A model generated the notes under the pieces. That model searched no databases and had not been told where the DNA came from. It was given only the letters and a program-made list of their open reading frames with translations. From positions 124,001 through 188,000 of IMG/VR virus record IMGVR_UViG_3300035698_035310: a stretch of 64,000 nucleotides of DNA; one strand, written 5' to 3'. Both the position numbers and the translations under genes were made by a program. Shown here piece by piece: positions 40,627 through 61,015 of this stretch. Position 1 is the stretch's first letter. Every line of letters begins with the position of its first letter.

Positions 40627-40926
40627 TTGAACGGTTCATATGAAATGCAGTGGGTGGGATGGGATAACTCAAAAAACCATGATAAAGTATGGGGTTGGTT
40701 TATCATGAAAAACGGCAAAGCTTGGTGTTTTTGGGGTGCAAGAGGTAAAAAATTAAAATTTAAAATACATCCATCACATGATTCTGCTGAAAAGGTTATG
40801 GAACAAAAAGAAAAAGCAAAATATAAGTTTGTTCCACCGTCGAAGTATGATACACTGGTTAAAGATTTCCTCGACGACGTTGAAGTATGGTGTATGACCG
40901 CAATAATAGAAGAAAAGGTAATGTAA
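40627..40926 (+). CDS. WGR-like domain protein, tandem paralog 2
   Basis: DKVWG...WCFWGARGKKLKFK; TTG start after GGGAG. Confidence 0.6.
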   Translation: MNGSYEMQWVGWDNSKNHDKVWGWFIMKNGKAWCFWGARGKKLKFKIHPSHDSAEKVMEQKEKAKYKFVPPSKYDTLVKDFLDDVEVWCMTAIIEEKVM

Positions 40927-41624
40927 TGAAAATATTATTAGTAAGGCACGGACAATCCGAAGCTAATGCAAATAAAGATTTGCATTATACAATGGCGGAT
41001 CATGCCATACCATTATCAGAGTTGGGTGTAAAGCAAGCACGCGAAGCCGGTAAATTTTTAGGAACTTATTTAGATAACATTGTTGGTATTCCTGCGGTCA
41101 AACCACTTATAAGATTATGGTTAAGCCCATATGAAAGAACTCGCAGAACCGCAAGTAATATAATGATGGGCATCAATGACACCGCCAAGAGCGGCAAACA
41201 TTCAACTTTTAAAATGGATAAACGCGAAAGCATCCGATTGTGTGAACAGCAGTTTGGATTGTTTGATGGTATACCCGACGATGAACGCCACATTAAATAT
41301 CCTGATGAGGCAGATCATTATCAAAAATGCGAAGATCAAAATGGTCATTTTTGGGCACGGATGCCTCTTGGTGAAAGTCGATTCGATGTAGCAAATCGTG
41401 TTCACGAAACATTTGGAACATTTCATCGAGATAATGAAAAACACGGCATTAATACTATTGTTGTGGTATGTCACGGTGTTACGTTGCGTGCATTTGTGAT
41501 GGAATGGTTACATCTTACACCCGAATGGTTTAATGATGAACCCAATCCTGGTAATTGTGATATTCGATTGATTGAAAACAACAAGGATGAAGGTTATATT
41601 CACAGAGGTAAAATAGATGAGTGA
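40926..41624 (+). CDS. histidine phosphatase (phosphoglycerate mutase family)
   Basis: LVRHGQSEAN, SPYERTRRT, RLCEQQFG, GES, VVCHG. Confidence 0.9.
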   Translation: MKILLVRHGQSEANANKDLHYTMADHAIPLSELGVKQAREAGKFLGTYLDNIVGIPAVKPLIRLWLSPYERTRRTASNIMMGINDTAKSGKHSTFKMDKRESIRLCEQQFGLFDGIPDDERHIKYPDEADHYQKCEDQNGHFWARMPLGESRFDVANRVHETFGTFHRDNEKHGINTIVVVCHGVTLRAFVMEWLHLTPEWFNDEPNPGNCDIRLIENNKDEGYIHRGKIDE

Positions 41625-43092: not shown

Positions 43093-44007
43093 ATGAAAAC
43101 CGATGAATACGGAAATCGCATGAAAGATTACGAAAGAATGGAAACCGGAAGACGGTTTATGCCACTTCTACCCGTATATGCGCGGATTGATGGTCGTAGT
43201 TTTAGTAAGTTCACCAAAGGAATGCGCCGCCCTTATGATAAACGCATGTCACGATGTATGATTGAAACAGCAAAATATCTTGTCGATCAAACCGACGCTA
43301 TGATAGGATATGTCCAAAGTGATGAGATTTCTCTTGCATGGTATAGCGATTCAGTTGATAGCCAAATTTTCTTTGATGGCAAGATTCAAAAGATGGTTTC
43401 AGTTCTTGCTGGTATGGCATCAGTTAAGTTTCTCCACGAATATCGAAATACATTTGGTGCACAGGCAGATATGGATGCGCTACCGTTGTTCGACGCACGT
43501 GTATTTCAACTACCTACTAAGGTAGAACTTGCAAACACATTTCTTTGGCGAGAACGTGATGCTACCAAAAATGCTATCAGTATGGCTGCACGATCATTTT
43601 ATAGCCATGCTGAATTACATAAAAAATCTGGTTCTGAAATGCAAGAAATGATGTTCCTAGCAGGACAGAACTTCAACGACTATCCAGCATTTTTTAAACG
43701 TGGAACATTTGTTCGCCGTGAATTAGTAGACATTGAACTGTCTGCTGGTGAATATGCCAACATTCCAGATCGTCATAAACCACATAGCATGTGGGTTAAA
43801 CGCCATCGCATGGTTGAAATGGATATGCCATCATTTGGAACAGTAATGAATCGCGACGATGTAATATTTGAAAAAGATGACCCTATCACTGCCGCTAAAA
43901 AAGTTCATTTTGGTTTATTGGCAGATGATGACGATATAATGAGTTATAATAATCCAATGGGTATGGTATTTGGTGGTGAAAACCCTATCAAAAAAGAAGG
44001 AACGTAA
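43093..44007 (+). CDS. tRNA(His) guanylyltransferase Thg1-like protein
   Basis: RMKDYE, YARIDGRSFSKFT, GYVQSDEISL, FDARVF, WRERDATKNAISM, FKRGTF. Confidence 0.92.
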   Translation: MKTDEYGNRMKDYERMETGRRFMPLLPVYARIDGRSFSKFTKGMRRPYDKRMSRCMIETAKYLVDQTDAMIGYVQSDEISLAWYSDSVDSQIFFDGKIQKMVSVLAGMASVKFLHEYRNTFGAQADMDALPLFDARVFQLPTKVELANTFLWRERDATKNAISMAARSFYSHAELHKKSGSEMQEMMFLAGQNFNDYPAFFKRGTFVRRELVDIELSAGEYANIPDRHKPHSMWVKRHRMVEMDMPSFGTVMNRDDVIFEKDDPITAAKKVHFGLLADDDDIMSYNNPMGMVFGGENPIKKEGT

Positions 44008-47940: not shown

Positions 47941-48133
47941 TATGAATCGCACCGAAATAAAAAAAGAACGGAAGCGCATCGACAAAAAAATCGAAGAATA
48001 TCGAAAAGGTATTCTAATAGCACATGCAGAACTACGTGTTATTGAAATGCAATGCGAGCATCCTAAAGAATTTAAGACGATGCATCAAGGCGACAGTGGC
48101 ACTAAATGCCCTGATTGTGGGTATGCCACATGA
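47933..48133 (+). CDS. small protein with terminal CPDC
   Basis: coiled-coil plus CEH...CPDCG. Confidence 0.6.
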   Translation: MNDMNRTEIKKERKRIDKKIEEYRKGILIAHAELRVIEMQCEHPKEFKTMHQGDSGTKCPDCGYAT

Positions 48134-48561
48134 GCAAACCTACATCATGCGGTGTTATAATCACCGACGGCAAAAATATATTGTTGGGTCATTCAACTGG
48201 TAATAAACATTGGGATATTCCTAAAGGTCAAATGGATGCCGGTGAAAGTTATAGAGAAGCTGCGCTACGAGAGTTACACGAAGAAACCGGAATTTTTCTA
48301 ACAGATGACGATGTAGTGGAAATAGGCGTAATGGATTATACATTGCGAAAAAATCTATATTTGTGTTATTATAAAACACCAACGTTGCCAGACATCGATA
48401 CAATTGTGTGTACTTCCATGTGTGAAGTAAAGGGGCGGGTGTTTCCAGAACTTGATAAGTTTGAATATGTTCCGTTCAGTTACATTCGTACATACACTAC
48501 CGAAAATATGGCTAACACAATAGGAAATGTATTGACTTCGCATAAAGACATCGTTGAATAA
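48130..48561 (+). CDS. NUDIX hydrolase
   Basis: Nudix box GQMDAGESYREAALRELHEETG. Confidence 0.92.
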   Translation: MSKPTSCGVIITDGKNILLGHSTGNKHWDIPKGQMDAGESYREAALRELHEETGIFLTDDDVVEIGVMDYTLRKNLYLCYYKTPTLPDIDTIVCTSMCEVKGRVFPELDKFEYVPFSYIRTYTTENMANTIGNVLTSHKDIVE

Positions 48562-48745: not shown

Positions 48746-49951
48746 ATGCGCCAAGAATATGCAATCGACATCGCAACCAATCCCGGCATTCATGCAATCG
48801 GCGTCATCGTCGACGTTTTGACGTTTACAAGCGACCAATATCACAACAGCGAAGACGGCGAATCGCATTTAACGGATTCACTGTGGGATAATTTGTATCG
48901 GTTCTTACAGGTTACTGATCCAGTTAATAAGTATCTCATTGGCGTAGGCTCTGAAGTGCGCGGTGGGGCTGGTGTTCCATTGCCATATGTAATGCCTGGT
49001 TTAGATCAAGTTCACGAAGGCGATACCGTTAAATGGATTATGACTAATAATCTCATGGGTGCAACCATTATCACAATGGATAAGATGGATGGCAACTCTG
49101 GACAAATAATTTATGACACCAACGGCAATCTTCAAATGGCATTTAGTCGTGGTTCAAGCACTGATGGTCAAGATTTAACACGGCATTTCAAACGCATGAA
49201 AAATCTTCCCACTATTAATGTTGGCACCGATCTTCACACCAGTATAGCGGTTCGTGTTGAAGTTGAAATGAAAGAAGAAGTGTTTAATGATTTGAATGAT
49301 CGGGGATTGATTAACAAGCGCAGTGGTGAAAAACAGAGTAATGCGAGAAATTACATCGGAGGACAAATGAATTCCACCGAAGCAACGCAAATATTTTATG
49401 ACAACGTTGATGTTATCGCATATGAGATTATGTTTCCGTTGATGGATACAAAAAAAGAAGAACTTACCGCACTTGGTCTTTATGGCTTTACGGTTGTTAA
49501 ATGGTCAGAACACATTGGTGGTACACTTGGTGATGATATGCTAACAGCCGCGCTTGAACAAGCACATAAAACAACCCCTTGGGCGATTGATGGGTTTGTT
49601 ATGATACCAAATGACCGCGCAGTTCGTGATGCAATTCCTGCACGCAAAGGAAGCAGCTTGAATCCAGTACATACTAAAAAATTCAAGGTAGGGCAGGACG
49701 ACAATGTTGCTGGAACGACAGTTATAAAAGTAGAATGGAAAGTATCTAAAGATGGATATTTAAAACCAACCGTATGCATTGATCCAGTTGATTTGGCAGG
49801 CGTTACAATATCAAAAGCAACGGGAATTAACGCTAAATATATATATGATAATAAAATTGGACCGGGTTCAAAAGTGTCAATAACACGAGCCGGTGATGTT
49901 ATACCAAGGTTATTATCTAGTTCCCCGATGCCAGAACAAAATATGGACTAG
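48746..49951 (+). CDS. ligA: NAD-dependent DNA ligase, N-terminal part (Ia, adenylation, OB)
   Basis: KMDG motif I, SRG, RVEV, DGFV, WKVSKDGYLKPTV, PVDLAGVTISKATG, RAGDVIP. Confidence 0.88.
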   Translation: MRQEYAIDIATNPGIHAIGVIVDVLTFTSDQYHNSEDGESHLTDSLWDNLYRFLQVTDPVNKYLIGVGSEVRGGAGVPLPYVMPGLDQVHEGDTVKWIMTNNLMGATIITMDKMDGNSGQIIYDTNGNLQMAFSRGSSTDGQDLTRHFKRMKNLPTINVGTDLHTSIAVRVEVEMKEEVFNDLNDRGLINKRSGEKQSNARNYIGGQMNSTEATQIFYDNVDVIAYEIMFPLMDTKKEELTALGLYGFTVVKWSEHIGGTLGDDMLTAALEQAHKTTPWAIDGFVMIPNDRAVRDAIPARKGSSLNPVHTKKFKVGQDDNVAGTTVIKVEWKVSKDGYLKPTVCIDPVDLAGVTISKATGINAKYIYDNKIGPGSKVSITRAGDVIPRLLSSSPMPEQNMD

Positions 49952-49995: not shown

Positions 49996-50814
49996 ATGAG
50001 CACCACTAACGAATATAATGATAATTATGATAAATGGTTTCATTCACAACTCGCTGAATTTGGCGAATATGAATGGTCTAAACCCAACTCTGATGGAAAT
50101 CAAGTTGATTTGATTCTTGTTGATGTTGAAAATAGCGATGCTGCTAAAAAACAACAACTTATTGATTTTTTCTCAAAGTTGGGTGTTGAATTTCTTGCCC
50201 AAAAATCATTGATTAAATTATATGATGCAGGATTCAATATGCCGGAAGATATCATTAATGCAACCGTTTCTGATATTCAATCAATTGTTGGCGAGGCGAA
50301 TGGTCGCAAAGGAATGGCAAGCCTGAATGAAAAACTGAATCCAGTTGAACCATGGATGCTTGCAGGTGTTACCAAATATTTTGGGCGATCAATTGGTCGA
50401 AAGAAAATGAAAAAGATTTATGATGCTACTGGACATGTAAATGAAACATCAGTTTCAGAGTTAATTAAAATTGATGGCCTCGAAATGAAGAGTGCTGAAA
50501 AAATTGTTGCTGGTTATGATGAATATGCTTCCTTCCTTACCCGCATCCATGATAAGTATACCATCGCAGAGGTTCAAAATACGCCTATGGGTAGCGATTG
50601 GGAGAATCAGGTTGTGACATTCACTGGCTATCGTGATGCGGACGCACAAGCTAAAATCGAAGCACAAGGTGGGCGTATTGGTAGCAGTGTATCCAGTAAG
50701 ACTACATTGGTTGTTACGAAAGACCCTAATTCGACCAGTAGCAAAATTGTAAAAGCGAAAGATTTGGGAATTGAAGTTATCGATCCCGTAGAACTTTATT
50801 CACGACTTAACTAA
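49996..50814 (+). CDS. ligA: NAD-dependent DNA ligase, C-terminal part (HhH + BRCT)
   Basis: own AAGGAG SD; ELIKIDGLEMKSA; BRCT VVTFTGYRD...GGRIGSSVSSKTTLVV...KAKDLGIEVI. Confidence 0.85.
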   Translation: MSTTNEYNDNYDKWFHSQLAEFGEYEWSKPNSDGNQVDLILVDVENSDAAKKQQLIDFFSKLGVEFLAQKSLIKLYDAGFNMPEDIINATVSDIQSIVGEANGRKGMASLNEKLNPVEPWMLAGVTKYFGRSIGRKKMKKIYDATGHVNETSVSELIKIDGLEMKSAEKIVAGYDEYASFLTRIHDKYTIAEVQNTPMGSDWENQVVTFTGYRDADAQAKIEAQGGRIGSSVSSKTTLVVTKDPNSTSSKIVKAKDLGIEVIDPVELYSRLN

Positions 50815-50828
50815 AGGAGTACTATATT

Positions 50829-51311
50829 ATGAATATGATTAAAACAACTTTGATTGCACTAACGATGATGATTGGTTCCACAGCAGCAATGTCTGAAACT
50901 GTTGGTTCAATTAAATTGGCTGGCGGATATGTAACATCATACGCATTAAAAATTCAAGCGTTTGACGATCCACGCGTTCAAGGAGTTTCATGCCATGTGA
51001 GTGATGTAGAGGTCAGTGGAATAACGTTTAATTCTGACCCAAGCAATGCAAGTATTTCGTGTCGACAAACGGGCCAAATCAAAATACATGGTGCAACTAA
51101 AGAACAATGGTGGGGTGATTTGAATGCGGCACCAAACGGCGAAAGTGTGTTTGGTAAAACCAAAGGATGGAATAAAAGCCTTTCCGTTGTCAGAGTTATT
51201 GATAAAAAACGTAAAACTATGGTATATGTTGTATATACACCAAAATGGGGTGAAGATTCTAAGAAAAATGTTGTATCATCAATTAGCATGTATGCACAGA
51301 CTAAAAAATAA
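50829..51311 (+). CDS. creA: CreA family exported protein
   Basis: signal peptide; AFDDPRVQGVSCHVS, SISCRQTG, GESVF, RVIDKKRKTMVYVV. Confidence 0.85.
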   Translation: MNMIKTTLIALTMMIGSTAAMSETVGSIKLAGGYVTSYALKIQAFDDPRVQGVSCHVSDVEVSGITFNSDPSNASISCRQTGQIKIHGATKEQWWGDLNAAPNGESVFGKTKGWNKSLSVVRVIDKKRKTMVYVVYTPKWGEDSKKNVVSSISMYAQTKK

Positions 51312-51886
51312 TGGCTATTCCGACTAAAATATTAGATGTATTAAAACCGAGATTTTCGCTTGACGATATTAAAAAGTTGGAATATTCTAATGTATTCGAT
51401 CAACCAACAGTAAAGGATTATGCTATGATGACACGATATCACGACAATTCAGACAATTATATGAATGAAGTATTATCACATGTTGATAAGTACGCTAGAG
51501 ACGAATATCGTCAATTGGATAAAAGCGCCCCTCGGGGAAATAACTTTGGATATCAAGATCACTCATATAAATCACATACACCAAATGATATCATTTCGGC
51601 AATAGCCGAATTTATGCGTCAGCCATCAAACGTAGCGGCGTTGCTTCTCGATGAACGAAACATTGATCGTATATTAGATCACTCTTCAAGGACACGAGAC
51701 AAAATGGATAAACAGCAACGCGACAGCGAAAATAAACGAACTGAACGTGAAACAACTGAAAAATATAATGAAGCAGTTGATGTTATTGACGAGTTGGAAG
51801 AATTTGGTATAGATAAGTTAGACGAGGAACAACTAGAAATACATGATGAAATGATGGAGATTATAAAAAAATACGAATCTTCTTGA
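51311..51886 (+). CDS. hypothetical protein
   Basis: 191-aa ORF, TAATG overlap. Confidence 0.65.
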   Translation: MAIPTKILDVLKPRFSLDDIKKLEYSNVFDQPTVKDYAMMTRYHDNSDNYMNEVLSHVDKYARDEYRQLDKSAPRGNNFGYQDHSYKSHTPNDIISAIAEFMRQPSNVAALLLDERNIDRILDHSSRTRDKMDKQQRDSENKRTERETTEKYNEAVDVIDELEEFGIDKLDEEQLEIHDEMMEIIKKYESS

Positions 51887-51911
51887 CAACCCGAATGTAA
51901 TGGTATATATT
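51883..51911 (+). promoter_or_regulatory. sigma70-type promoter for RNA unit 1
   Basis: TTGACA-N17-TATATT, unit 1 begins 9 nt downstream. Confidence 0.6.
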
Positions 51912-51919
51912 ATATAAAC

Positions 51920-51982
51920 GGTGGCTAGGACGCTTCTTCCTTCTATTTTTTTGCATAAAACCTAGAGGTTCCAATTTCCACC
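51920..51982 (+). ncRNA. putative structured ncRNA unit 1
   Basis: GGTGG-CTAGGA-N4-TCTTCCTTC-N19-TAGAG-N3-CCAATTT-CCACC. Confidence 0.65.
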
Positions 51983-51992
51983 TAAATTTTTA

Positions 51993-52020
51993 TTGACATA
52001 TTATTATTTTGTGATACTAT
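51993..52020 (+). promoter_or_regulatory. sigma70-type promoter for RNA units 2-3 and downstream gene
   Basis: TTGACA-N16-TACTAT with TGn; unit 2 begins 7 nt downstream. Confidence 0.65.
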
Positions 52021-52026
52021 AAGAAC

Positions 52027-52098
52027 GTGGCAGCTAGGATTTTTCTTCCTTCTTACTCAACTTGAAAATGAAACTTAGAGAACCCAATTTCTGCCCAC
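52027..52098 (+). ncRNA. putative structured ncRNA unit 2
   Basis: GTGGCAG-CTAGGA-N4-TCTTCCTTC-N23-TAGAG-N3-CCAATTT-CTGCCCAC. Confidence 0.65.
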
Positions 52099-52104
52099 CA
52101 GATC

Positions 52105-52198
52105 GAACAGCTAGGAAATTTCTTCCTTCTCACAATGACAGAAGCCTGCCCCATGGGTGGGCTTCACTTACCAGAATTAGAGGTTTCAATTTCTGTTC
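52105..52198 (+). ncRNA. putative structured ncRNA unit 3
   Basis: GAACAG-CTAGGA-N4-TCTTCCTTC-N48 (contains GAAGCCTGCC/GGTGGGCTTC hairpin)-TAGAG-N3-TCAATTT-CTGTTC. Confidence 0.65.
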
Positions 52199-52230
52199 AC
52201 TTTTAATTGTTTTAACGGAGGTCAAAAACG

Positions 52231-54438
52231 ATGAATACACTTTTTGGATTTAATAAATTACACAACAGCATCGCATTACAGAACAAGCAGTCTGTTGTTA
52301 TCGAAACTTTGTCTGGTGATATCGATGATTCACTTATTCTTGCAATCCTTACAGATATTGCACAGTTTGGCTATACGCTAGACGGTAATGTTATCAGTGC
52401 GTTGAAGACGCAATCTGAAAATACATTGGTTGAGTTCCATAAAGAACTAACTGCACAATTGTCTATTATGGTTGGTGCACACGTTACGTATCGTCCATTA
52501 TTCAAGAAATTCCCTAATGATATTCCTGACGATGCAGAATATTTCACTAAACGATTCATTGGTCATGTTACCAATTTATTTGGATTAACACCAGAAAATG
52601 TGGCACCACTTTCGTGTGGTCACGTCATTGATACTCGTTTATTCAACATGGATGATTTCGGCGCTTGCCCAATCTGTCAAATGCAGGTTGATGAAACCAC
52701 GGCTGCGACTGATCGTCCATCGTTGGATGAATCGACACCATTTAAAATCATTGGCTTGGCTACTAGCGACGATGTATACGCCATCTTCACAAACTTATTG
52801 TCGGCTAAAGCATCTATCTCTGCGGAGAATAAAGAACTAATCACCGCATTGGTTGCGGAGAGTAATGTGTTTAATTACATTCCCGATGTTATCCCAATGA
52901 AGGAAAATGTTGCGTTGATTGCTGGTTTGCTTGTTAAACACACTAATGAAGCACTTGATGTATTGGTTAAGCACGTCAACACTTCAACTGATGTATTGCG
53001 CCTTGCTGTTCAATTAAATGATGGTGATGTATCACTTGCAGAACCAACCAAGTTTAAGTTGCGCAACAAAGAACGTCGTATAATCATGGGACTTCTGGAT
53101 GCAGTTAACAAACCAGAAGAAGACATGCTACGTTATCGTATGCAATGGATTCGTTTGGCTGAAGTGTTGCACATTGGTTCAAAGCGCCATCGTTTTCCTA
53201 ATGCATTTAATGCAGTGGACAAGTTGCGTAATGACGCCAAGTCGATTGAGACATTTAACAGCAAAGTTGAAAAGAATGTCCTTGTAGCAAAGGCAACTGG
53301 TTTAGATGATGGATTAATTAAACTATTGGCAACTCGCCCCGGTGAGTTTGCAAGACGTTTGGATTTCATGTTGAGTAATATTGGCAATGTTGTTACGGTT
53401 CTTGACACATTCAAGTCTATTGTTGATAGAGTGGCTTCACCAATGTTGTTGCAAATGGCTTCGCACTTCAACACCCGAACTGAAGTTGCACCATTTCGTT
53501 ATTTCTTACCGAAAGGCAACGTTGCAAAGATGCAAATAGTTGATGACACACGCGCAGTTCTTGATCTTACGATTGTTAAATCAGTTGTTAAGATCATCAA
53601 TGACGAATTAACAAAACGCTTTTCAACAATGGAAAGCCTTGGTAATGTTTTGATTGATCCGATGCTTGAAAATTATCTTGTTCCATTGGCGCAACGTGCA
53701 GCGACTAAAAGTTTGGTTACGGTTGCGCGTGGCTCACGTATCACGTTTTCTGATAAGAACACCATTCGTTTGTTCCTTTACTGGAAAGAAAATGCCGAGG
53801 TTGGACGCACCGATGTTGACTTAAGTGCGGTTGCATATGACCAAAATTGGGACTATGTTGAACATCTTTCTTACACCAACCTATCTGGTGTTGGCAGTGT
53901 CCACTCTGGTGATATTCAATCTGCTCCCAATGGTGCATCTGAGTTCATTGACTTCAATATTAAAGAAGCAATGGAACATGGTATTCGTTATGTAACGATG
54001 AACGTTCTTTCATATAGCGGTCAAGCATTCGACCTATTTGAATCAATCGCTGGAGTTATGGGACGCGATGAACCATCAAGCGGTGAACATTATGAACCAA
54101 CTACAGTTGAGAATAAGTTTGACGTTGGCGGTAACTCACGCCACAACATTCCGTTTGTTGTTGATTTGAAGAAACGCGAAATCATTTGGACTGATTTGGC
54201 TGTGAGTGGTGGTGCATTCAATAACGTAGAACAAAGTTCAGGGGCTATTGTAATGATGTCTAAGGCGGCTGAAGCAATGGTTGACACTAAACCTACCATG
54301 ATTGATTTGTTGCAACTACACTTCGATGCACGTGCCGACAGCGTTGACTATGAGCGTCAGCCTGATAAAGAATACGATACGGTGCTTGGTGTTTCTATGG
54401 CTTCTAATGTAGATGACATCCTAGCCAATTGGTTATAA
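52231..54438 (+). CDS. prokaryotic RING finger family 4 protein with ROT/TROVE-like repeats and C-terminal TerD domain
   Basis: LSCGHVID...GACPICQ RING; helical middle with RPGEFARRLD; TerD-like DVDLSAV, HSGDIQSAPNGASEFID, YSGQAF; GGAGG SD. Confidence 0.85.
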   Translation: MNTLFGFNKLHNSIALQNKQSVVIETLSGDIDDSLILAILTDIAQFGYTLDGNVISALKTQSENTLVEFHKELTAQLSIMVGAHVTYRPLFKKFPNDIPDDAEYFTKRFIGHVTNLFGLTPENVAPLSCGHVIDTRLFNMDDFGACPICQMQVDETTAATDRPSLDESTPFKIIGLATSDDVYAIFTNLLSAKASISAENKELITALVAESNVFNYIPDVIPMKENVALIAGLLVKHTNEALDVLVKHVNTSTDVLRLAVQLNDGDVSLAEPTKFKLRNKERRIIMGLLDAVNKPEEDMLRYRMQWIRLAEVLHIGSKRHRFPNAFNAVDKLRNDAKSIETFNSKVEKNVLVAKATGLDDGLIKLLATRPGEFARRLDFMLSNIGNVVTVLDTFKSIVDRVASPMLLQMASHFNTRTEVAPFRYFLPKGNVAKMQIVDDTRAVLDLTIVKSVVKIINDELTKRFSTMESLGNVLIDPMLENYLVPLAQRAATKSLVTVARGSRITFSDKNTIRLFLYWKENAEVGRTDVDLSAVAYDQNWDYVEHLSYTNLSGVGSVHSGDIQSAPNGASEFIDFNIKEAMEHGIRYVTMNVLSYSGQAFDLFESIAGVMGRDEPSSGEHYEPTTVENKFDVGGNSRHNIPFVVDLKKREIIWTDLAVSGGAFNNVEQSSGAIVMMSKAAEAMVDTKPTMIDLLQLHFDARADSVDYERQPDKEYDTVLGVSMASNVDDILANWL

Positions 54439-56172: not shown

Positions 56173-57036
56173 ATGTCTAAAGATATTTATAACACTAAAT
56201 TTATATTCGGTCAAGATTATCATGGATTTATTTATGAATGGGTTGATAATTCTAATGGTAAAAAATATATAGGATCGCATAAAGGGTCGATTGATGATGG
56301 ATATATAGGTTCAGGAACATATTTTATTTCTGCTTATAAAAAAAGAACCCATTGTTTTAGTCGAATAATATTAGAATATATATCAAAAAATATAGATGAT
56401 ATATATACCATTGAACAAAAATGGTTAAATATGGTAAATAATATATCATCAAATGAATCATATTATAATCTATCAAATAACGCAACAGGGGGAAATTCTG
56501 AAAAAAACTACGCACGAAAAAGAAATGGTGAATTTACTGAAAAAGAAATGATTGCACATGAGCGAAAAGCCAATGGTATATTTACACCAAAAGAACTAGA
56601 GTTTCATAAACGTCGAAAAAATAGATTTTTAAATGGTGATTATACAAAAGCAGAAAAACAGTCTTATATACGATCTAAAGAGCGAAAATCAGCAGGGAAT
56701 TTTACAGATGCAGAAATTAAATATTTTAGTGAACAAAAAAAGAGAAAATCAAATGGTATATTTACACCAAAAGAAATAGAGTTTCATAATAATCAAAGTA
56801 ATCGGAAGTCGGCAGGAAATTTTACAGATGCCGAGTTAAAATGTTTAAATCTCGATAAAATAAGAAAATCAAAAGGCTTATTTACCGATGCGGAATTAAA
56901 AAATTTTAAGAACATGAAGGGAAAACGATGGCTTACCAAAGATTTTATCAATAAATTAATATCAAAAAATTTAATACAACAATATATTGATGCCGGTTGG
57001 ATATTTGGAAAATATAAAAAAATCAATCCCAACTAA
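56173..57036 (+). CDS. GIY-YIG homing endonuclease (Seg-like) with C-terminal repeats
   Basis: GFIYEW...KKYIGSH...DGYIGSG, FSRIILE, EQKWL, YYNL; seven G-x-(F/Y)-T-x-x-E repeats. Confidence 0.88.
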   Translation: MSKDIYNTKFIFGQDYHGFIYEWVDNSNGKKYIGSHKGSIDDGYIGSGTYFISAYKKRTHCFSRIILEYISKNIDDIYTIEQKWLNMVNNISSNESYYNLSNNATGGNSEKNYARKRNGEFTEKEMIAHERKANGIFTPKELEFHKRRKNRFLNGDYTKAEKQSYIRSKERKSAGNFTDAEIKYFSEQKKRKSNGIFTPKEIEFHNNQSNRKSAGNFTDAELKCLNLDKIRKSKGLFTDAELKNFKNMKGKRWLTKDFINKLISKNLIQQYIDAGWIFGKYKKINPN

Positions 57037-60000
57037 ATTTATCAATCCCATCAAAATCTATTTCACTTCCGTCTGATAATGTTAAACTTCCTGACATTTC
57101 TTCCGATGTTGGAAGATTGTTTGGATTGCTATCTGCCGTAAATGTTTCACCATCAACTGTTAATGCCCACCCTTGTGTGCCTTCCATATTTAGTGTATCT
57201 GTTCCCTCGCCGCCCGATATCCAATCACCGCCACCAAATCCGTCGCCGCCTTCGCCACCGAAGATAAACATATCATCGCCACCATTGCCCATTACGTGGT
57301 CATTAGCATCTGTTGCATCGTCGCTATCAAATGTATCATCTGCTTTTTTTCCTTTGTCTTTTCCATCTATTTCATTATATTCAGAACCGCCTTCACCACC
57401 CTCGCCGCCTTCACCACCATCTTTATCTTTTTTATCTTTACCTTTTCCACCTTCACCGCCTTCACCGCCATGTCCATGCCCATGTGATCCACCTTCACCG
57501 CCTTCACCACCTTCATTGCCTTCAACGTCGATAATGGTCGTAGCGGTTCCGGTTCCACCTTCACTGTCCACTATATTATATGTGAAACTATCTTCACCAG
57601 AAAATCCTTCATATGGCGTATAAGTCCATGTTCCATTTTCATTATCTATTATAATTCCATTTTCAGGATCGTCAATGCTGGTAATAGTTATAGTGTCGCC
57701 ATCTAAATCTGTATCATTAGATAGCAAATCTTCAGAAGAAAACGTTATAGAATTATCATCATCAATATCAAATTCATCATCAACACCAAGAGGTGTGGTA
57801 TTTCCTGTTTCATCTACTAACCACGTGGATGATTGTGTGTCAACAGATACAACAGATGCCGTAACAGGTGTATCTCGTTCTATTTCTACTGTTCCATCTG
57901 AATACGTTAATGTGTTAACCGAAGTGTTTGATGTTTCTGTTGTTATGTCTGTAGTAGTTGTTTCTGTAAACACTCGATTAATCACAGTTGTTTTTGTTCC
58001 ATCGTCATTTTCAACAATCGATTCATTATTTACAAATGTTATGGTTGATTCTGGTTCACTCGTTATAATATTTTCTTCTGTTTCTATGGTTGTAACAATT
58101 TCAGGATCAACATATTCGGTTTCGACATTAGTTAATGTTTCCGTTCGTGTATCTGAGGTTATTTCGCTATCAATGTTGGGTGTTCCATTTTCGACTTCAA
58201 CCGTTCCGTCTGAATATGTTATTGTGCTGACGGGAGTTATCGTTGTGGTGGTTGTGGTTTCAGTCGCATATTCATTTGTGGTTGTTGTAGTAGTATCTAT
58301 TTGTTCGCGGTTATTATCCGTATCGATAGTTGTATCACTTTCTATTATGTCGTTAGTTGTTTCCCATGTTTCATCGCCCACAACAGCATCGGTAGTGGTA
58401 ACGTATTCAGTGGTTATTGTTGGTTCTTCATATGTAGTAACAATTTCGTCCGTGGTATCAACTCTTGATTCAGTTGTTGTATCTGCTGTAATAACAGGAT
58501 CGTCCTGTTCAATTTCAACAGTTCCATCTGAATACGTAATGGTTGTTATTTGTGTGGTTGTGGTTGTGGTTGTTGTATCAGTTTCATAATTGTTTGTGGT
58601 TGTGGTCGTTGTATCTAATTGCTCACGGTTATTATCCAAATCATTTGAACGTGACACATCATCTTCGGTTGATGTTGAAATTAAGGTTTCATCGCCTACG
58701 ACAACGTTGGTTGTTACTTCTTCTGACGTAACAATTTGTGGCTCTTCGTAAACAACGTTGGTATCAGTTAACACTTCTTCTCTTGTATCGGTTGTAGGTT
58801 CAACTGTTTCAACTGGCGTTCCGTATTCTATTTCAACTGTTCCATCTGAATAAGTGATAGTGATAACGGGTGTTGTTGTTACGGTTGTAGTTGTTATTGT
58901 ATCATATGTATTTGTGGTTGTGTTGGTAGTATCTAATTGTTCGCGGTTATTATCCGTATCAATAGTGCGAACAGTTTCTGATTCTGTTTCGGTGTTAGAT
59001 AATATTTCATCGCTAACAACTACTGTTGTTTCATGCTCATAGGTTTCAACAATTTCAGGGTCTTCATTCGTAGTTATTGTTTCTGAAGTCACTTCATCGC
59101 GTGTTGATGTATCAGTGGTAGTTTCTATCGCTGGTGTGCCGTATTCTGTTTCTACAGTGCCGTCGCTGTAAGTTATGGTATGAACAGGCGTAGATGTGGT
59201 TGTGGTGGTTGTATCAACCGCATAGGTATCTGTGGTCGTTGTTGTCGTATCTACCCGTTCGTTATTATATTCTGTTTCAATAGTTGTCACTACATTTTCT
59301 TCTGATGCTGTTCCAGTTTGATATTCATCGCCAATTGTATCCACTGATTGCACATCAGTCGTGATTGTAATAACAGGCTCTTCTGTACTTGTGGATATAT
59401 CAATTTCGCGGATTTCATCACGTGTTGATGTATCAATTTGAACTGTGTTATCGGTTGGTTCTGCGCGTTCGATTTCAATAGTTCCATCGCTATATGTAAT
59501 GGTTTGAACTTCGATTGTTGTTGTTGTTTCCAATATGGGCGTTTCAAATGTATCTGTATATTCACGCGTCACAGTAACTATTTCTTGATTATTATCTAAA
59601 TCGTTAACACGCGATGATGAATCATAGAACTCTGTATTAGTTAAAGTTTCTTTGCCGTTGTGAAGGTCGGTTGAAATTTCATATGTGACAACAATGGTTG
59701 GTTCTTCATATGTGGTAACTATTTCATCGGCAATATCGGTTCTTGTTTCTGTATTTGTATTTTTTGTAATAGACGGATCGCCCTGTTCAATTTCAACTGT
59801 TCCATCTGAATAAGTGATAGTTATTACTGGTGTTATTGTGGTGGTAGTCGTTGTATCAATGGCATAGTTATTCGTGGTAGTAGTTGTTGTATCTACTTGT
59901 TCACGATTGTTATCAGTGTCTATTATACGGTCAATTTCTGTCCCGGTTTCTGATCCAATTAGAATTTCATTACCAATTTCATTTGATATTTCAGTTGTAT

Positions 60001-61015
60001 ATTCGGTTGTGATAACAGGTAGTTCTATATCAGTAGCAAATATTGCATCTCTAATCGCAACTGTTGTATCAACTGTGGTGTTGGATTCTATCACAGGGTC
60101 ACCCACAATCGTTTCAATAGTGCCATCACTATATGTAATAGTTTCGGTTGGCGTTGTTGTTTCTGTGACCGTTGAATCAATCGTTGTGGTATCTGTATAA
60201 TTACGAGTCGTTGTGACTATTTCTTGATTGTTTGCTAGATCATTTTCTTTTGAAACTACATCTTCGTATGTTGTTACAACACATGGATCATCGATAACTG
60301 TATTTGAAATAATTTCGTATGAAATTTCTCTAGACATCTCGGTCACTGGTTCTACAGCATCATCGCCACCACCACCATTGGTGCCATTATCAATAGGAAA
60401 CCCAAGATCGGGGTTAAGCACAGAATTAAGAATTGCGTCAAAGTCAATTTCAGGCATAACGTCTGTATTCGCGAGTGGATCATTTGGCACCTCGTCAACG
60501 CTTTGATTTACATCATTTATTGTAGAAAATCCGCTATCTTCCGCACGCTGCTGTTCTTCTTCGGCTACTTTTTTAAATACATCATCGCCATGCATTTCGC
60601 GTGTATCAAATATCAAACTGGCACGATCTATAGCATAATCTATTTGTTCTGATGTAAACCCATTCTCAATTAATTCATTCCTTGTGTAACCATTGACGTC
60701 AATAGATACATTATTTATATCATTAAACGCTACTATATTATTTTCAGTATTGACATATATACCCAACGATGTCTGTATTACTGTGCCTTCTGTGATTAGT
60801 GCACTTAACAATTCCGCTTCTGTTAGTTGTGAACCCATGTGAATATTTTGTGAACCAGAACCAAACACATCTTCTTTATCGCCACCATCACCTTCGTGAA
60901 GTTGTTGTACCGATGCATCAAGGTCAATTTCATCTTCGGTCTGTAAGACAGTTAAATCATCAAGTATTGAGTGATTTTCGCGAACATCGTCGTCGTCATT
61001 TGTTATTTCAGCCAT
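57023..61015 (-). CDS. large acidic Thr-rich repeat protein with cadherin-like/Big domain and RTX-like Ca-binding tail (adhesin-like)
   Basis: eight ~106-aa T(I/L)TYSDGT repeats; LLSNDTDLDGD...GTWTYTP...DSFTY; GEGGEGG tracts; GNGGDD and GGEGTDTL nonapeptides. Confidence 0.8.
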   Translation of the reverse strand: MAEITNDDDDVRENHSILDDLTVLQTEDEIDLDASVQQLHEGDGGDKEDVFGSGSQNIHMGSQLTEAELLSALITEGTVIQTSLGIYVNTENNIVAFNDINNVSIDVNGYTRNELIENGFTSEQIDYAIDRASLIFDTREMHGDDVFKKVAEEEQQRAEDSGFSTINDVNQSVDEVPNDPLANTDVMPEIDFDAILNSVLNPDLGFPIDNGTNGGGGDDAVEPVTEMSREISYEIISNTVIDDPCVVTTYEDVVSKENDLANNQEIVTTTRNYTDTTTIDSTVTETTTPTETITYSDGTIETIVGDPVIESNTTVDTTVAIRDAIFATDIELPVITTEYTTEISNEIGNEILIGSETGTEIDRIIDTDNNREQVDTTTTTTNNYAIDTTTTTTITPVITITYSDGTVEIEQGDPSITKNTNTETRTDIADEIVTTYEEPTIVVTYEISTDLHNGKETLTNTEFYDSSSRVNDLDNNQEIVTVTREYTDTFETPILETTTTIEVQTITYSDGTIEIERAEPTDNTVQIDTSTRDEIREIDISTSTEEPVITITTDVQSVDTIGDEYQTGTASEENVVTTIETEYNNERVDTTTTTTDTYAVDTTTTTTSTPVHTITYSDGTVETEYGTPAIETTTDTSTRDEVTSETITTNEDPEIVETYEHETTVVVSDEILSNTETESETVRTIDTDNNREQLDTTNTTTNTYDTITTTTVTTTPVITITYSDGTVEIEYGTPVETVEPTTDTREEVLTDTNVVYEEPQIVTSEEVTTNVVVGDETLISTSTEDDVSRSNDLDNNREQLDTTTTTTNNYETDTTTTTTTTQITTITYSDGTVEIEQDDPVITADTTTESRVDTTDEIVTTYEEPTITTEYVTTTDAVVGDETWETTNDIIESDTTIDTDNNREQIDTTTTTTNEYATETTTTTTITPVSTITYSDGTVEVENGTPNIDSEITSDTRTETLTNVETEYVDPEIVTTIETEENIITSEPESTITFVNNESIVENDDGTKTTVINRVFTETTTTDITTETSNTSVNTLTYSDGTVEIERDTPVTASVVSVDTQSSTWLVDETGNTTPLGVDDEFDIDDDNSITFSSEDLLSNDTDLDGDTITITSIDDPENGIIIDNENGTWTYTPYEGFSGEDSFTYNIVDSEGGTGTATTIIDVEGNEGGEGGEGGSHGHGHGGEGGEGGKGKDKKDKDGGEGGEGGEGGSEYNEIDGKDKGKKADDTFDSDDATDANDHVMGNGGDDMFIFGGEGGDGFGGGDWISGGEGTDTLNMEGTQGWALTVDGETFTADSNPNNLPTSEEMSGSLTLSDGSEIDFDGIDKFSWD
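57890..60140 (-). repeat. degenerate tandem repeat, ~318-bp period, 8 copies
   Basis: SDGT-coding cores near 60123, 59802, 59484, 59160, 58842, 58524, 58205, 57893; 31-nt identity at 59791-59821 and 58831-58861. Confidence 0.8.

What the first reader, a model, noticed from the sequence alone, without database searches (positions are those of the whole stretch)
51883..54438. Three Y-RNA-like structured repeats with their own promoters in front of a RING/TROVE-like/TerD protein: candidate phage ribonucleoprotein system
Seen: the 340-bp intergenic region holds three units (51920-51982, 52027-52098, 52105-52198) with the shared core CTAGGA-N4-TCTTCCTTC-[19/23/48 nt]-TAGAG-N3-YCAATTT. Each unit is closed by a different terminal stem (GGTGG/CCACC; GTGGCAG/CTGCCCAC; GAACAG/CTGTTC), which is covariation between copies. 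An inner stem GGA-N4-TCT / AGAG-N3-YC also largely pairs, with N4/N3 varying together. This leaves a conserved CUA/AAUUU internal loop and a pyrimidine-rich top loop. Units 1 and 2 start 9 and 7 nt after TTGACA/-10 promoters, so the predicted +1 lies at or near the first stem base. Known: the Pfam Prok-RING_4 architecture (RING + ROT/TROVE-like repeats + TerD) was proposed to act in RNA processing, and Ro60/TROVE proteins bind Y RNAs built as terminal stem, bulge, upper stem and pyrimidine-rich loop. Inference: these are the cognate small RNAs or autoregulatory operators of this protein, possibly used for RNA repair or decay, or as decoys against host defence. I cannot tell whether the motif is already in Rfam.
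Basis: partly seen in the sequence, partly recalled or inferred. Interest (0 to 1): 0.88.

Follow-up and report, generated by a model that had tools for sequence, protein, structure and literature searches.

The report
Small RNA family tied to RING/TerD protein
The three repeats are genes for a widespread family of small folded RNAs, absent from the RNA family database, that always sits on the same strand beside one uncharacterised protein in giant phages and many bacteria, which points to a new RNA-protein particle built like the Ro60/Y RNA particle but with an unrelated protein.

Summary
Three units (51919-51983, 52028-52096, 52105-52198) share one fold: a terminal stem P1, a CUA(U)/AUUU internal loop, a stem P2, and an apical region that opens with invariant UCCUUCUA and closes with UAG.

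A covariance model built from relatives found 214 copies in 79 viral loci and 140 copies in 79 of 80 bacterial loci. Every copy is on the strand of the RING/helical/TerD-like gene, usually within 100 nt of it. Pairing is 94-98%, against 32-54% in slid controls. G.U pairs far outnumber A.C (283 to 31), so the RNA strand is the functional one.

A search with the RNA motif alone recovered the gene in 81 of 116 loci. No other neighbouring gene is conserved. Rfam 15 has no matching family.

In some phage relatives the apical region carries a T-arm/D-arm tRNA mimic. These score below threshold against the bacterial Y RNA model YrlA.

The protein is not detectably TROVE/Ro60 by Pfam, Foldseek or hhalign. 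Its C-terminal domain is distantly TerD-like.

Best reading: these are small RNA partners of the protein, with Y-RNA-like modular logic. Binding and function are untested.

The parts
51883..51911 (+). promoter-like site before unit 1 (TTGACA-17-TATATT)
   Evidence: 11 of 12 consensus matches. The -10 hexamer ends 7 nt before the model start of unit 1. This is a consensus match only.
51919..51983 (+). RNA unit 1: P1 GGUGG/CCACC, CUA/AAUUU loop, P2, plain apical loop opening with UCCUUCUA
   Evidence: 57.1 bits, E 1.8e-11; fold. Missing from the closest relative L284.
51993..52020 (+). promoter-like site before unit 2 (TTGACA-16-TACTAT with TG)
   Evidence: 10 of 12 matches. TTGACA and much of the -10 are kept in the 74%-identity relative L284.
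52028..52096 (+). RNA unit 2: P1 GGCAG/CUGCC
   Evidence: 47.0 bits, E 8.2e-09. Conserved in L284 with paired changes in P2.
52105..52198 (+). RNA unit 3: P1 GAACAG/CUGUUC, with an extra apical hairpin at 52141-52165
   Evidence: 44.9 bits, E 2.9e-08; fold z -3.88. In L284 the apical hairpin has a different sequence but still pairs.
52217..52221 (+). Shine-Dalgarno GGAGG of the protein gene, 19 nt after unit 3
   Evidence: Read directly; conserved in L284.
52231..54438 (+). 735-aa protein of the MXAN_6230/SCO0854 RING-domain family
   Evidence: NCBIfam NF041916, E 5e-149, 498 bits against a cut-off of 600. PHROG 33734. AF2 model pLDDT 84.5. 4007 clusters at 50% identity in public data.
52609..52704 (+). 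RING-like zinc module (C-x-H ... C-P-x-C), residues 127-158
   Evidence: Pfam Prok-RING_4 27.6 bits against a cut-off of 27; found in 18 of 23 relatives. The cysteines are not invariant.
52744..53640 (+). alpha-helical repeat region rich in invariant Arg/Lys, residues 172-470
   Evidence: Domain model pLDDT 93.7. No significant PDB fold match. No TROVE signal.
53713..54246 (+). beta-sandwich, distantly TerD-like, residues 495-672
   Evidence: Pfam TerD in 5 of 32 domain slices, best E 2.7e-08. The only PDB sequence hits are TerD structures 2KXT and 3IBZ, E 0.03-0.1.

Best explanation
The three units are genes for small structured RNAs of a large family that Rfam does not hold. The RNAs most likely bind the protein encoded next to them and form a ribonucleoprotein.

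Shown:
- The fold is P1, a CUAU/UUU internal loop, P2, and an apical junction that opens with invariant UCCUUCUA and closes with UAG.
- The RNA (plus) strand carries the constraint.
- The RNA and the RING/helical/TerD-like gene are locked together in both directions across phages and bacteria, with no third conserved gene.
- Copy number is labile (1-5 copies).
- Copies lie upstream, downstream or apart from the gene.

Inferred:
- The invariant nucleotides, which sit at the two ends of the 9-bp P2 helix, are the handle that the 735-aa protein grips, probably with its Arg/Lys-rich helical region.
- The variable apical part is an exchangeable module. It is a plain loop in units 1 and 2, a hairpin in unit 3, and a tRNA mimic in some phage relatives. 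It would recruit, or act as a decoy for, a second factor, as in Ro60/Y RNA.
- In the window, units 1 and 2 start at their own promoters, and unit 3 and the gene are read through from unit 2.
- The unit next to the start codon may also let the protein repress its own translation.
- The frequent placement inside phage tRNA arrays, and the tRNA-mimic modules, point to tRNA or RNA surveillance, repair or counter-defence as the field of action.
For: Structure:
- A MAFFT alignment made without any structure input gave 15 pairs, 12 of them with compensatory changes.
- In model-fitted alignments, 93.9% (viral) and 97.7% (bacterial) of cells pair, against 32-54% when partners are slid. Covariation scores are 0.87 and 0.63, against 0.19 or less.
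- G.U pairs number 130 and 153, against 23 and 8 A.C.

Linkage:
- 214 and 140 model hits, all on the gene strand.
- The nearest unit is a median 22 nt from the gene.
- The window has only these three hits in 64 kb.
- The motif-only search recovered the gene in 81 of 116 loci, and 129 of 129 motif matches there were on the gene strand.
- No other conserved neighbour. Bacterial flanking genes are unrelated housekeeping genes.

Free-standing RNA:
- 53 units lie downstream of the gene, and orphan copies exist.
- L089 2087-2148 has its own promoter and a U8 tail.
- A U-tract follows P1 in 54 of 133 bacterial units, against 1-5 at control offsets.
- Promoter-like sites sit at the right distance in 23 of 255 units, against 1-9 at control offsets, including both in the window.

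Modularity:
- YrlA-like T-arm/D-arm inserts score 44.3, 34.7 and 34.3 bits against a gathering score of 69.
- 35 of 67 distinct viral loci have tRNA genes within 3 kb, all 168 on the gene strand.

The family is present in cultured phages XacN1, LpeD, Weasels2 and RcXuper.
Against: - No binding, expression or processing data exist. All evidence is genomic.
- The last unit usually ends 10-90 nt before the start codon, which also fits a purely cis-acting leader.
- Most units (about 90%) lack a good sigma-70-like site at the right distance, and only 17-41% have a U-tract. How the ends are made is therefore unknown for most copies.
- The protein has no recognised RNA-binding domain, and no solved structure resembles its helical region.
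- tRNA-like modules occur in only about 6% of distinct units, and none is in the window.
- The alignments used for the large pair counts were fitted to the model.
Confidence: 0.65

Rival explanations
1. The units are only cis-acting leader elements of the protein's mRNA. They would act as an autoregulatory operator or an attenuator, bound by the protein or by a metabolite to set translation or read-through. They would not be free small RNAs with a role of their own.
For: 215 of about 290 located units are upstream of the gene, and the nearest unit is a median 22 nt from it. Unit 3 has no promoter and ends 19 nt before the Shine-Dalgarno sequence. P1 followed by a U-tract looks like an attenuator.
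Against: 53 units lie downstream of the gene. Orphan copies lie kilobases away or inside tRNA arrays. One orphan has its own promoter and terminator. Loci hold 1-5 diverged tandem copies. Some units carry tRNA-mimic inserts. A leader would not need any of these.
Confidence: 0.15
2. The invariant single-stranded CUUCCUUCUA acts by base pairing. It would bind purine-rich, Shine-Dalgarno-like sequences (GAAGGAAG/GGAGG), or mimic the 3' tail of 16S rRNA. The RNAs would then be translation regulators or sponges, and the protein would be a chaperone or only co-regulated.
For: The motif is predicted to be unpaired in all units and is invariant across hosts from several phyla, as would suit a universal target. 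From my own knowledge of 16S rRNA, CUUCCUUC matches the 16S tail CCUCCUUA at 6 of 8 positions.
Against: The motif lacks the CCUCC core. Sequence variants CUUACUUCUA and CAUACUUCUA exist in whole clades, which would weaken pairing to a Shine-Dalgarno sequence. The equally invariant GG-CUAU, UAG and UUUCC elements have no role in this model. No target was identified.
Confidence: 0.1
3. The RNAs are inhibitors of a harmful activity of the protein, in the manner of type III toxin-antitoxin RNA repeats. The cassette would then be a defence or addiction module.
For: Tandem RNA units lie directly upstream of a protein gene on the same strand. The cassette is a mobile two-part module spread patchily through phages and bacteria.
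Against: The units are 69-75% identical with compensatory changes, not near-identical repeats. The protein matched no model of PADLOC-DB, the anti-phage defence library, which I expect to include type III toxin families though I did not check that; at 735 aa it is also far larger than the roughly 170-200-aa type III toxins (from my own knowledge). Units also occur after the gene.
Confidence: 0.07
4. The repeats act at the DNA level, as operator sites, recombination sites or a mobile repeat, and the apparent RNA fold is incidental.
For: They are repeated, palindrome-containing sequences in an intergenic region.
Against: All 354 model hits are on the gene strand. G.U pairs outnumber A.C by 283 to 31, which only makes sense for RNA of the plus strand. 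Stems change sequence freely while staying paired.
Confidence: 0.02

Closest known systems
Ro60 (Rsr) with Y RNAs, especially bacterial and phage YrlA/YrlB (Rfam RF02553; Chen et al. 2014, PMC4201824; Thermus phage phiLo Ro60 with two upstream Yrl RNAs, PMC12135203)
   Same: One or more small RNAs are encoded within a few kb of the protein gene on the same strand, often two upstream. The 5' and 3' ends pair into a stem, followed by an internal loop and a second stem that carries the conserved nucleotides. The distal part is variable, and in some members it is a permuted tRNA mimic (T-arm, then D-arm). The system occurs in both bacteria and large phages.
   Different: The protein is not TROVE+vWA by Pfam, Foldseek or hhalign. 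The Ro-binding motif GNCGAAN0-1G is absent from 242 of 242 units. The conserved nucleotides are different (GGCUAU, UCCUUCUA, UAG, UUUCC). The core is not found by any Rfam model. My model finds nothing in 46 kb around the Ro60 gene of phage Bxz1. Most members have no tRNA-like part.
Pfam Prok-RING_4 (PF14447) / NCBIfam NF041916, MXAN_6230/SCO0854 family RING domain-containing protein
   Same: The window protein belongs to this protein family.
   Different: These entries describe only the protein. I found no paper in the held library on SCO0854 or MXAN_6230, or on an RNA partner. The Pfam note about ROT/TROVE-like repeats is recalled from memory, and my tests did not reproduce it.
Type III toxin-antitoxin systems (ToxIN and relatives)
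   Same: An RNA array lies directly upstream of the protein it is presumed to bind.
   Different: The repeats here are diverged, individually folded units of 57-130 nt. The protein is large, multidomain and matched no model of PADLOC-DB, the anti-phage defence library. Units also lie downstream of the gene and apart from it.
Large catalogues of unnamed candidate structured RNAs in phages (Fremin and Bhatt 2023, PMC10690425)
   Same: That catalogue was made from the same IMG/VR collection by covariation, so the motif may be among its 8495 unnamed DNA-virus candidates.
   Different: The main text does not mention this motif, TerD or RING. Its tables were not available to check.

Membership tests
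Y RNA / YrlA (Rfam RF00019, RF02553) | Encoded beside, and bound by, a Ro60 protein (TROVE HEAT-repeat ring plus vWA domain) | tested here: not met
   Pfam TROVE hit 0 of 23 and 0 of 70 sequences. Foldseek against the PDB gave no Ro60 match for the full or the domain model. hhalign against a 25-sequence Ro60 alignment gave 0.3-0.4% probability. Binding itself cannot be tested here.
Y RNA / YrlA (Rfam RF00019, RF02553) | Ro-binding motif GNCGAAN0-1G (bacteria) or GGUCCGA (vertebrates) in the 5' strand of the terminal stem (PMC4201824) | tested here: not met
   0 of 242 distinct units contain GNCGAAN0-1G anywhere.
Y RNA / YrlA (Rfam RF00019, RF02553) | Score at or above the Rfam gathering threshold | tested here: not met
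   No Y_RNA or YrlA hit in the window even at E up to 10. Relatives with tRNA-like inserts reach 34-44 bits against a gathering score of 69, through the insert only.
Y RNA / YrlA (Rfam RF00019, RF02553) | 5' and 3' ends pair into a stem interrupted by an internal loop, with a variable distal module | tested here: met
   P1, internal loop and P2 are supported by covariation. The distal part varies from 20 to more than 90 nt.
Y RNA / YrlA (Rfam RF00019, RF02553) | Within about 4 kb of the partner gene, on the same strand | tested here: met
   354 of 354 hits are on the gene strand; most lie within 300 nt.
Y RNA / YrlA (Rfam RF00019, RF02553) | At least one RNA per genome with a tRNA-like domain | tested here: not met
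   None in the window. About 6% of distinct units have one, nearly all of them in phage loci.
Prok-RING_4 / NF041916 RING_SCO0854 protein family | Match to the family models | tested here: met
   Pfam 27.6 bits against a cut-off of 27. NCBIfam E 5e-149, though 498 bits is below the equivalog cut-off of 600. The protein is a homologue, not a certified equivalog.
TerD domain (PF02342) | Beta-sandwich with the acidic Ca-binding GD...G.G..E/D motif; match to the TerD model | tested here: inconclusive
   The window protein itself gives no Pfam hit. 5 of 32 relatives do, best E 2.7e-08. The domain profile hits only TerD structures 2KXT and 3IBZ, at E 0.03-0.1, over the SGD...G..E..D motif. Foldseek against the PDB listed no TerD structure among the 50 best matches shown.
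Type III toxin-antitoxin | Near-identical tandem RNA repeats upstream of a small endoribonuclease toxin | tested here: not met
   The units are 69-75% identical. The protein is 735 aa and matched no model of PADLOC-DB, the anti-phage defence library.
cis-regulatory leader / riboswitch | Always in the 5' UTR of the regulated gene, one copy per gene | tested here: not met
   53 units lie downstream of the gene, and there are orphan units and 1-5 copies per locus.

The most novel reading that the evidence does not exclude
This is a second, Ro60-independent Y-RNA-like ribonucleoprotein system. It is spread over thousands of protein clusters in giant phages and bacteria. A RING/TerD protein grips a conserved RNA handle, and exchangeable RNA tops, including tRNA mimics, tether it to the cell's tRNA or RNA processing machinery, or act as decoys for it. 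For example, this could protect or repair tRNAs during phage-host conflict.
Probability: 0.3. Interest if true: 0.9.

Novelty: new variant of a known kind. Interest (0 to 1): 0.8.

Why it matters
If the RNAs do bind the protein, this defines a new RNA-protein particle that nobody has studied. It is as widespread as Ro60/Y RNA: 4007 protein clusters at 50% identity, at least 446 bacterial species genomes, and many giant phages.

It would give a first functional handle on a large protein family that has no function assigned in the sources checked. It would add a well-supported family to the RNA catalogues. It would also show that the design 'conserved protein handle plus exchangeable RNA module, sometimes a tRNA mimic' arose more than once.

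The system is directly testable, because it is present in cultured, harmless organisms: Paenibacillus, Brevibacillus, Lactobacillus phage LpeD and Rhodococcus phage Weasels2.

Tried and rejected
- Rfam at permissive thresholds on the region and at gathering threshold on the whole window: only two tRNAs far away, nothing on the units.
- ARAGORN: no tRNA in the region.
- Megablast of the locus against phage records: no match.
- phmmer and profile search of the protein against PDB sequences: nothing except a weak RING and, for the C-terminal domain, weak TerD.
- Foldseek against the PDB with the full model and with a high-confidence model of the helical region: only generic alpha-solenoids at TM 0.24 or less, no Ro60. 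I rejected the TROVE reading for this reason, and because of hhalign.
- PADLOC: no defence family.
- Search for a conserved third gene by clustering all ORFs of 160 loci: none. The recurrent 'families' are shadow ORFs inside the gene.
- Literature searches for Prok-RING/TROVE/TerD, SCO0854/MXAN_6230, and phage Y RNAs: no description of this RNA. Supplementary tables of two relevant papers are not held.
- Classifying apical loops into a few types: most are idiosyncratic. Only one clade keeps two recognisable subtypes.
- A sigma-70 promoter in front of every unit: rejected, since only about 9% have a good site.
Full report
**What is in the window.** The 5' core CTAGGA-N4-TCTTCCTTC occurs three times in 64 kb, against 0.03 expected. 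Each copy is followed by TAGAG-N3-YCAATTT. Each unit folds into a terminal stem, an internal loop, an inner stem and a pyrimidine-rich top. Fold energies alone are not convincing for units 1 and 2 (z about -1.2). Unit 3 is stable because of an added hairpin at 52141-52165. The units are 69-75% identical to each other. Two strong promoter-like sites (11/12, and 10/12 with TG) each end 7 nt before the first stem base of units 1 and 2. Unit 3 follows unit 2 after 8 nt without such a site, and it ends 19 nt before the GGAGG of the gene.

**The RNA is a conserved family.** The protein has hundreds of relatives. I fetched 80 viral loci with a protein alignment. The nonamer TCTTCCTTC recurred on the gene strand just before or after the gene in many of them. 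I aligned 36 short units from 24 sources with MAFFT, using no structural information. RNAalifold gave 15 pairs, 12 of them with compensatory changes. The consensus is:
- P1 of 6 bp, whose inner G-C, G-C pairs are conserved;
- a 5' CUAU and a 3' (N)UUU internal loop;
- P2 of 6+3 bp with one unpaired position;
- an apical region that opens with invariant UCCUUCUA, continues with a variable stretch, and closes with UAG.

**Model search.** A covariance model built from this alignment found 214 matches at E of 0.01 or less in the window plus 79 viral loci. All were on the gene strand. The window had exactly the three units. On the fitted alignment, 93.9% of cells pair, against 35-52% when partners are slid. 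The covariation score is 0.87, against 0.19 or less.

**Bacteria have it too.** They are mostly Paenibacillus, Brevibacillus and Bacillus relatives, plus MAGs labelled Bacteroidota, Cyanobacteria, Verrucomicrobiaceae, Acidobacteria and Hyphomicrobiaceae. In the 80 loci kept, the model found 140 units in 79 loci, all on the gene strand, typically two just upstream of the start codon. There, 97.7% of cells pair, against 32-54% in slid controls.

**Which molecule carries the constraint.** G.U pairs outnumber A.C by 130:23 in the viral set and 153:8 in the bacterial set. The constraint therefore acts on RNA of the plus strand, not on DNA or the other strand.

**The link runs both ways, and nothing else is linked.** I searched the viral collection with the RNA motif alone (GGCTAT-N7-CTTCCTTCTA). 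This gave 116 stretches. Of these, 81 contain the gene, and all 129 motif matches there are on its strand, 112 of them within 500 nt. Most of the other stretches had too little flanking DNA to tell. A few are extra copies elsewhere in genomes that hold the gene. Clustering all ORFs of 160 loci found no second conserved gene. Bacterial neighbours are unrelated chromosomal genes. The unit of inheritance is therefore the protein plus its RNAs. Copy number is labile: the closest relative (74% protein identity) keeps units 2 and 3 and the TTGACA box and much of the -10 of the unit-2 promoter, with paired changes in P2. It has no unit 1.

**Free RNAs or a leader?** The nearest unit is a median 22 nt from the gene, which would fit a leader. 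Several facts argue against a leader-only reading:
- 53 units lie after the gene.
- Orphan copies exist.
- A Brevibacillus orphan 1.8 kb from the gene has TTTACA-17-TAGAGT ending 6 nt before P1, and a U8 run straight after P1.
- A U-tract follows P1 in 54 of 133 distinct bacterial units, against 1-5 at control offsets, and in 19 of 114 viral units.
- Promoter-like sites at the right distance are enriched (23 of 255, against 1-9), mainly before the first unit of an array.
- In phages the cassette often sits in tRNA arrays. 35 of 67 distinct loci have tRNA genes within 3 kb, and all 168 are on the same strand. This suggests co-transcription and processing with tRNAs.

I conclude that the units are most likely discrete small RNAs. 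The proximal one may in addition serve the gene in cis.

**The Y-RNA comparison.** Rfam 15 has no family for the core. In some phage relatives the variable top is a tRNA mimic. L056 2176-2317 carries a T-arm, a hairpin and then a D-arm, which is the permuted order of YrlA. It matches the YrlA model end to end at 34.3 bits (gathering score 69). L068 and L073 reach 44.3 and 34.7 bits through the insert. L056 2654-2784 holds a near-complete tRNA fold with an odd anticodon loop. About 6% of distinct units have such inserts, and none is in the window. The architecture and the gene arrangement parallel Ro60/Y RNA, including the phage phiLo case with two Yrl RNAs upstream of its Ro60 gene (PMC12135203) and the criteria of Chen et al. 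(PMC4201824). This is a resemblance in how it is built, not membership. The Ro-binding motif is absent from 242 of 242 units. My model also finds nothing in 46 kb around the genuine Ro60 gene of phage Bxz1.

**The protein.** It matches NCBIfam NF041916 (MXAN_6230/SCO0854 family RING domain-containing protein) at E 5e-149, Pfam Prok-RING_4 marginally and PHROG 33734. A library-wide profile search gives 4007 clusters at 50% identity. The AlphaFold model (pLDDT 84.5) shows:
- an N-terminal alpha/beta part;
- a small zinc module (C-x-H ... C-P-x-C, which is one RING site);
- about 300 residues of helical repeats with many invariant Arg/Lys;
- a beta-sandwich, then C-terminal helices.

The beta-sandwich is distantly TerD-like. 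Pfam TerD hits 5 of 32 relatives, and the only PDB sequence hits are TerD structures, aligned over the acidic loop motif.

The TROVE idea failed four separate tests: Pfam on 23 full-length sequences and 70 domain sequences; Foldseek against the PDB with the full model and with a pLDDT 93.7 domain model; hhalign against a Ro60 alignment seeded from Bxz1 gp220; and a profile search against PDB sequences. PADLOC has no match. Structural relatives in BFVD are the same family in phages SCTP-2-like, LpeD and Campylobacter IBB35.

**Mechanism, with its status.**
- Shown: a covarying RNA fold; strand-specific, two-way genetic linkage to one protein family; labile copy number and position; a modular top.
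- Inferred: the protein binds the invariant nucleotides at both ends of P2. The variable top engages a second factor or acts as a decoy. The proximal unit may give feedback on translation.
- Field of action (weakest step): tRNA or RNA surveillance, repair or phage-host conflict. This is suggested by the tRNA arrays, the tRNA mimics, a Thg1-like gene 8 kb upstream in the window, and nucleotidyltransferase genes near the cassette in XacN1 and RcXuper.
- Rivals: a leader-only role; base pairing by the CUUCCUUCUA loop; an RNA inhibitor of a harmful protein; DNA-level repeats (already contradicted).

**Novelty.** I found no description of this RNA in Rfam 15 or in the searchable literature. It may be one of thousands of unnamed candidates in a phage-wide catalogue, which I could not check. 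The protein family is catalogued but unstudied. I rate the finding a new variant of a known kind (a protein-partnered modular small RNA of the Y RNA type), with high interest. The system occurs in cultured phages (XacN1, LpeD, Weasels2, RcXuper) and in common soil bacilli, so the decisive experiments are easy to set up.

Noticed in passing
window 43093-44007, 40887-41624, 48115-48561: A Thg1-like protein (tRNA-His guanylyltransferase fold, Pfam E 1.8e-29), a histidine phosphatase and a NUDIX hydrolase lie 4-11 kb upstream of the cassette. This may be an RNA-end repair neighbourhood, but it is not conserved in other loci.
   Followed up: partly
window 48746-49951 and 49996-50814: The NAD-dependent DNA ligase is split into two adjacent ORFs: adenylation plus OB domains, then HhH plus BRCT domains.
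   Followed up: no
window 50829-51311: A CreA-family protein (Pfam E 1e-28) is encoded in a giant phage, directly upstream of the ORF that precedes the RNA units.
   Followed up: no
window 56173-57036 and 57023-61015 (-): A homing-endonuclease-like ORF (PHROG 314), and a 1330-aa minus-strand protein with a cadherin-like domain.
   Followed up: no
L089 2087-2148 (Brevibacillus formosus): An orphan RNA unit 1.8 kb from the gene has its own TTTACA-17-TAGAGT promoter-like site and a U8 tail. It is the cleanest example of a free-standing small RNA gene of this family.
   Followed up: partly
L279 2233-2900 (Rhodobacter phage RcXuper): The 1.9-kb stretch with no annotated feature upstream of RCXUPER_7 holds four divergent units (CAUCCUUCUA or CAUACUUCUA). 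The first has a T-arm/D-arm module. My model missed them, so the family is broader than the model.
   Followed up: partly
L284 1150-1505 against window 51880-52235: The closest relative (74% protein identity) has a terminator-like hairpin where the window has unit 1, so unit 1 is a recent gain or loss. Unit 3's apical hairpin is replaced by a different sequence that still pairs.
   Followed up: yes
L013, L017, L029, L060 (upstream units): One phage clade keeps two apical-loop subtypes in fixed order: a UUGA..UCAA mini-hairpin, then a GGYGAAA loop. This hints at specialised paralogous RNAs, like YrlA and YrlB.
   Followed up: partly
viral loci L001-L080: 35 of 67 distinct loci have tRNA genes within 3 kb of the gene, and all 168 tRNAs are on the gene strand. 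Only 3 of 80 bacterial loci do. In the window the only tRNAs (Leu, Arg) are at 2381-2539, 50 kb away.
   Followed up: partly
L277 634-1497 (XacN1 ORF399) and L279 5551-6540 (RCXUPER_9): Genes annotated as nucleotidyltransferase lie within 2.5 kb of the cassette in two cultured phages. I did not check whether they are CCA-adding enzymes.
   Followed up: no
L109 3990-4004 (Paenibacillus sp. LS1): The second unit ends about 11 nt before the ATG, with no recognisable Shine-Dalgarno sequence between them. Translation start may therefore depend on the RNA structure or on bound protein.
   Followed up: no
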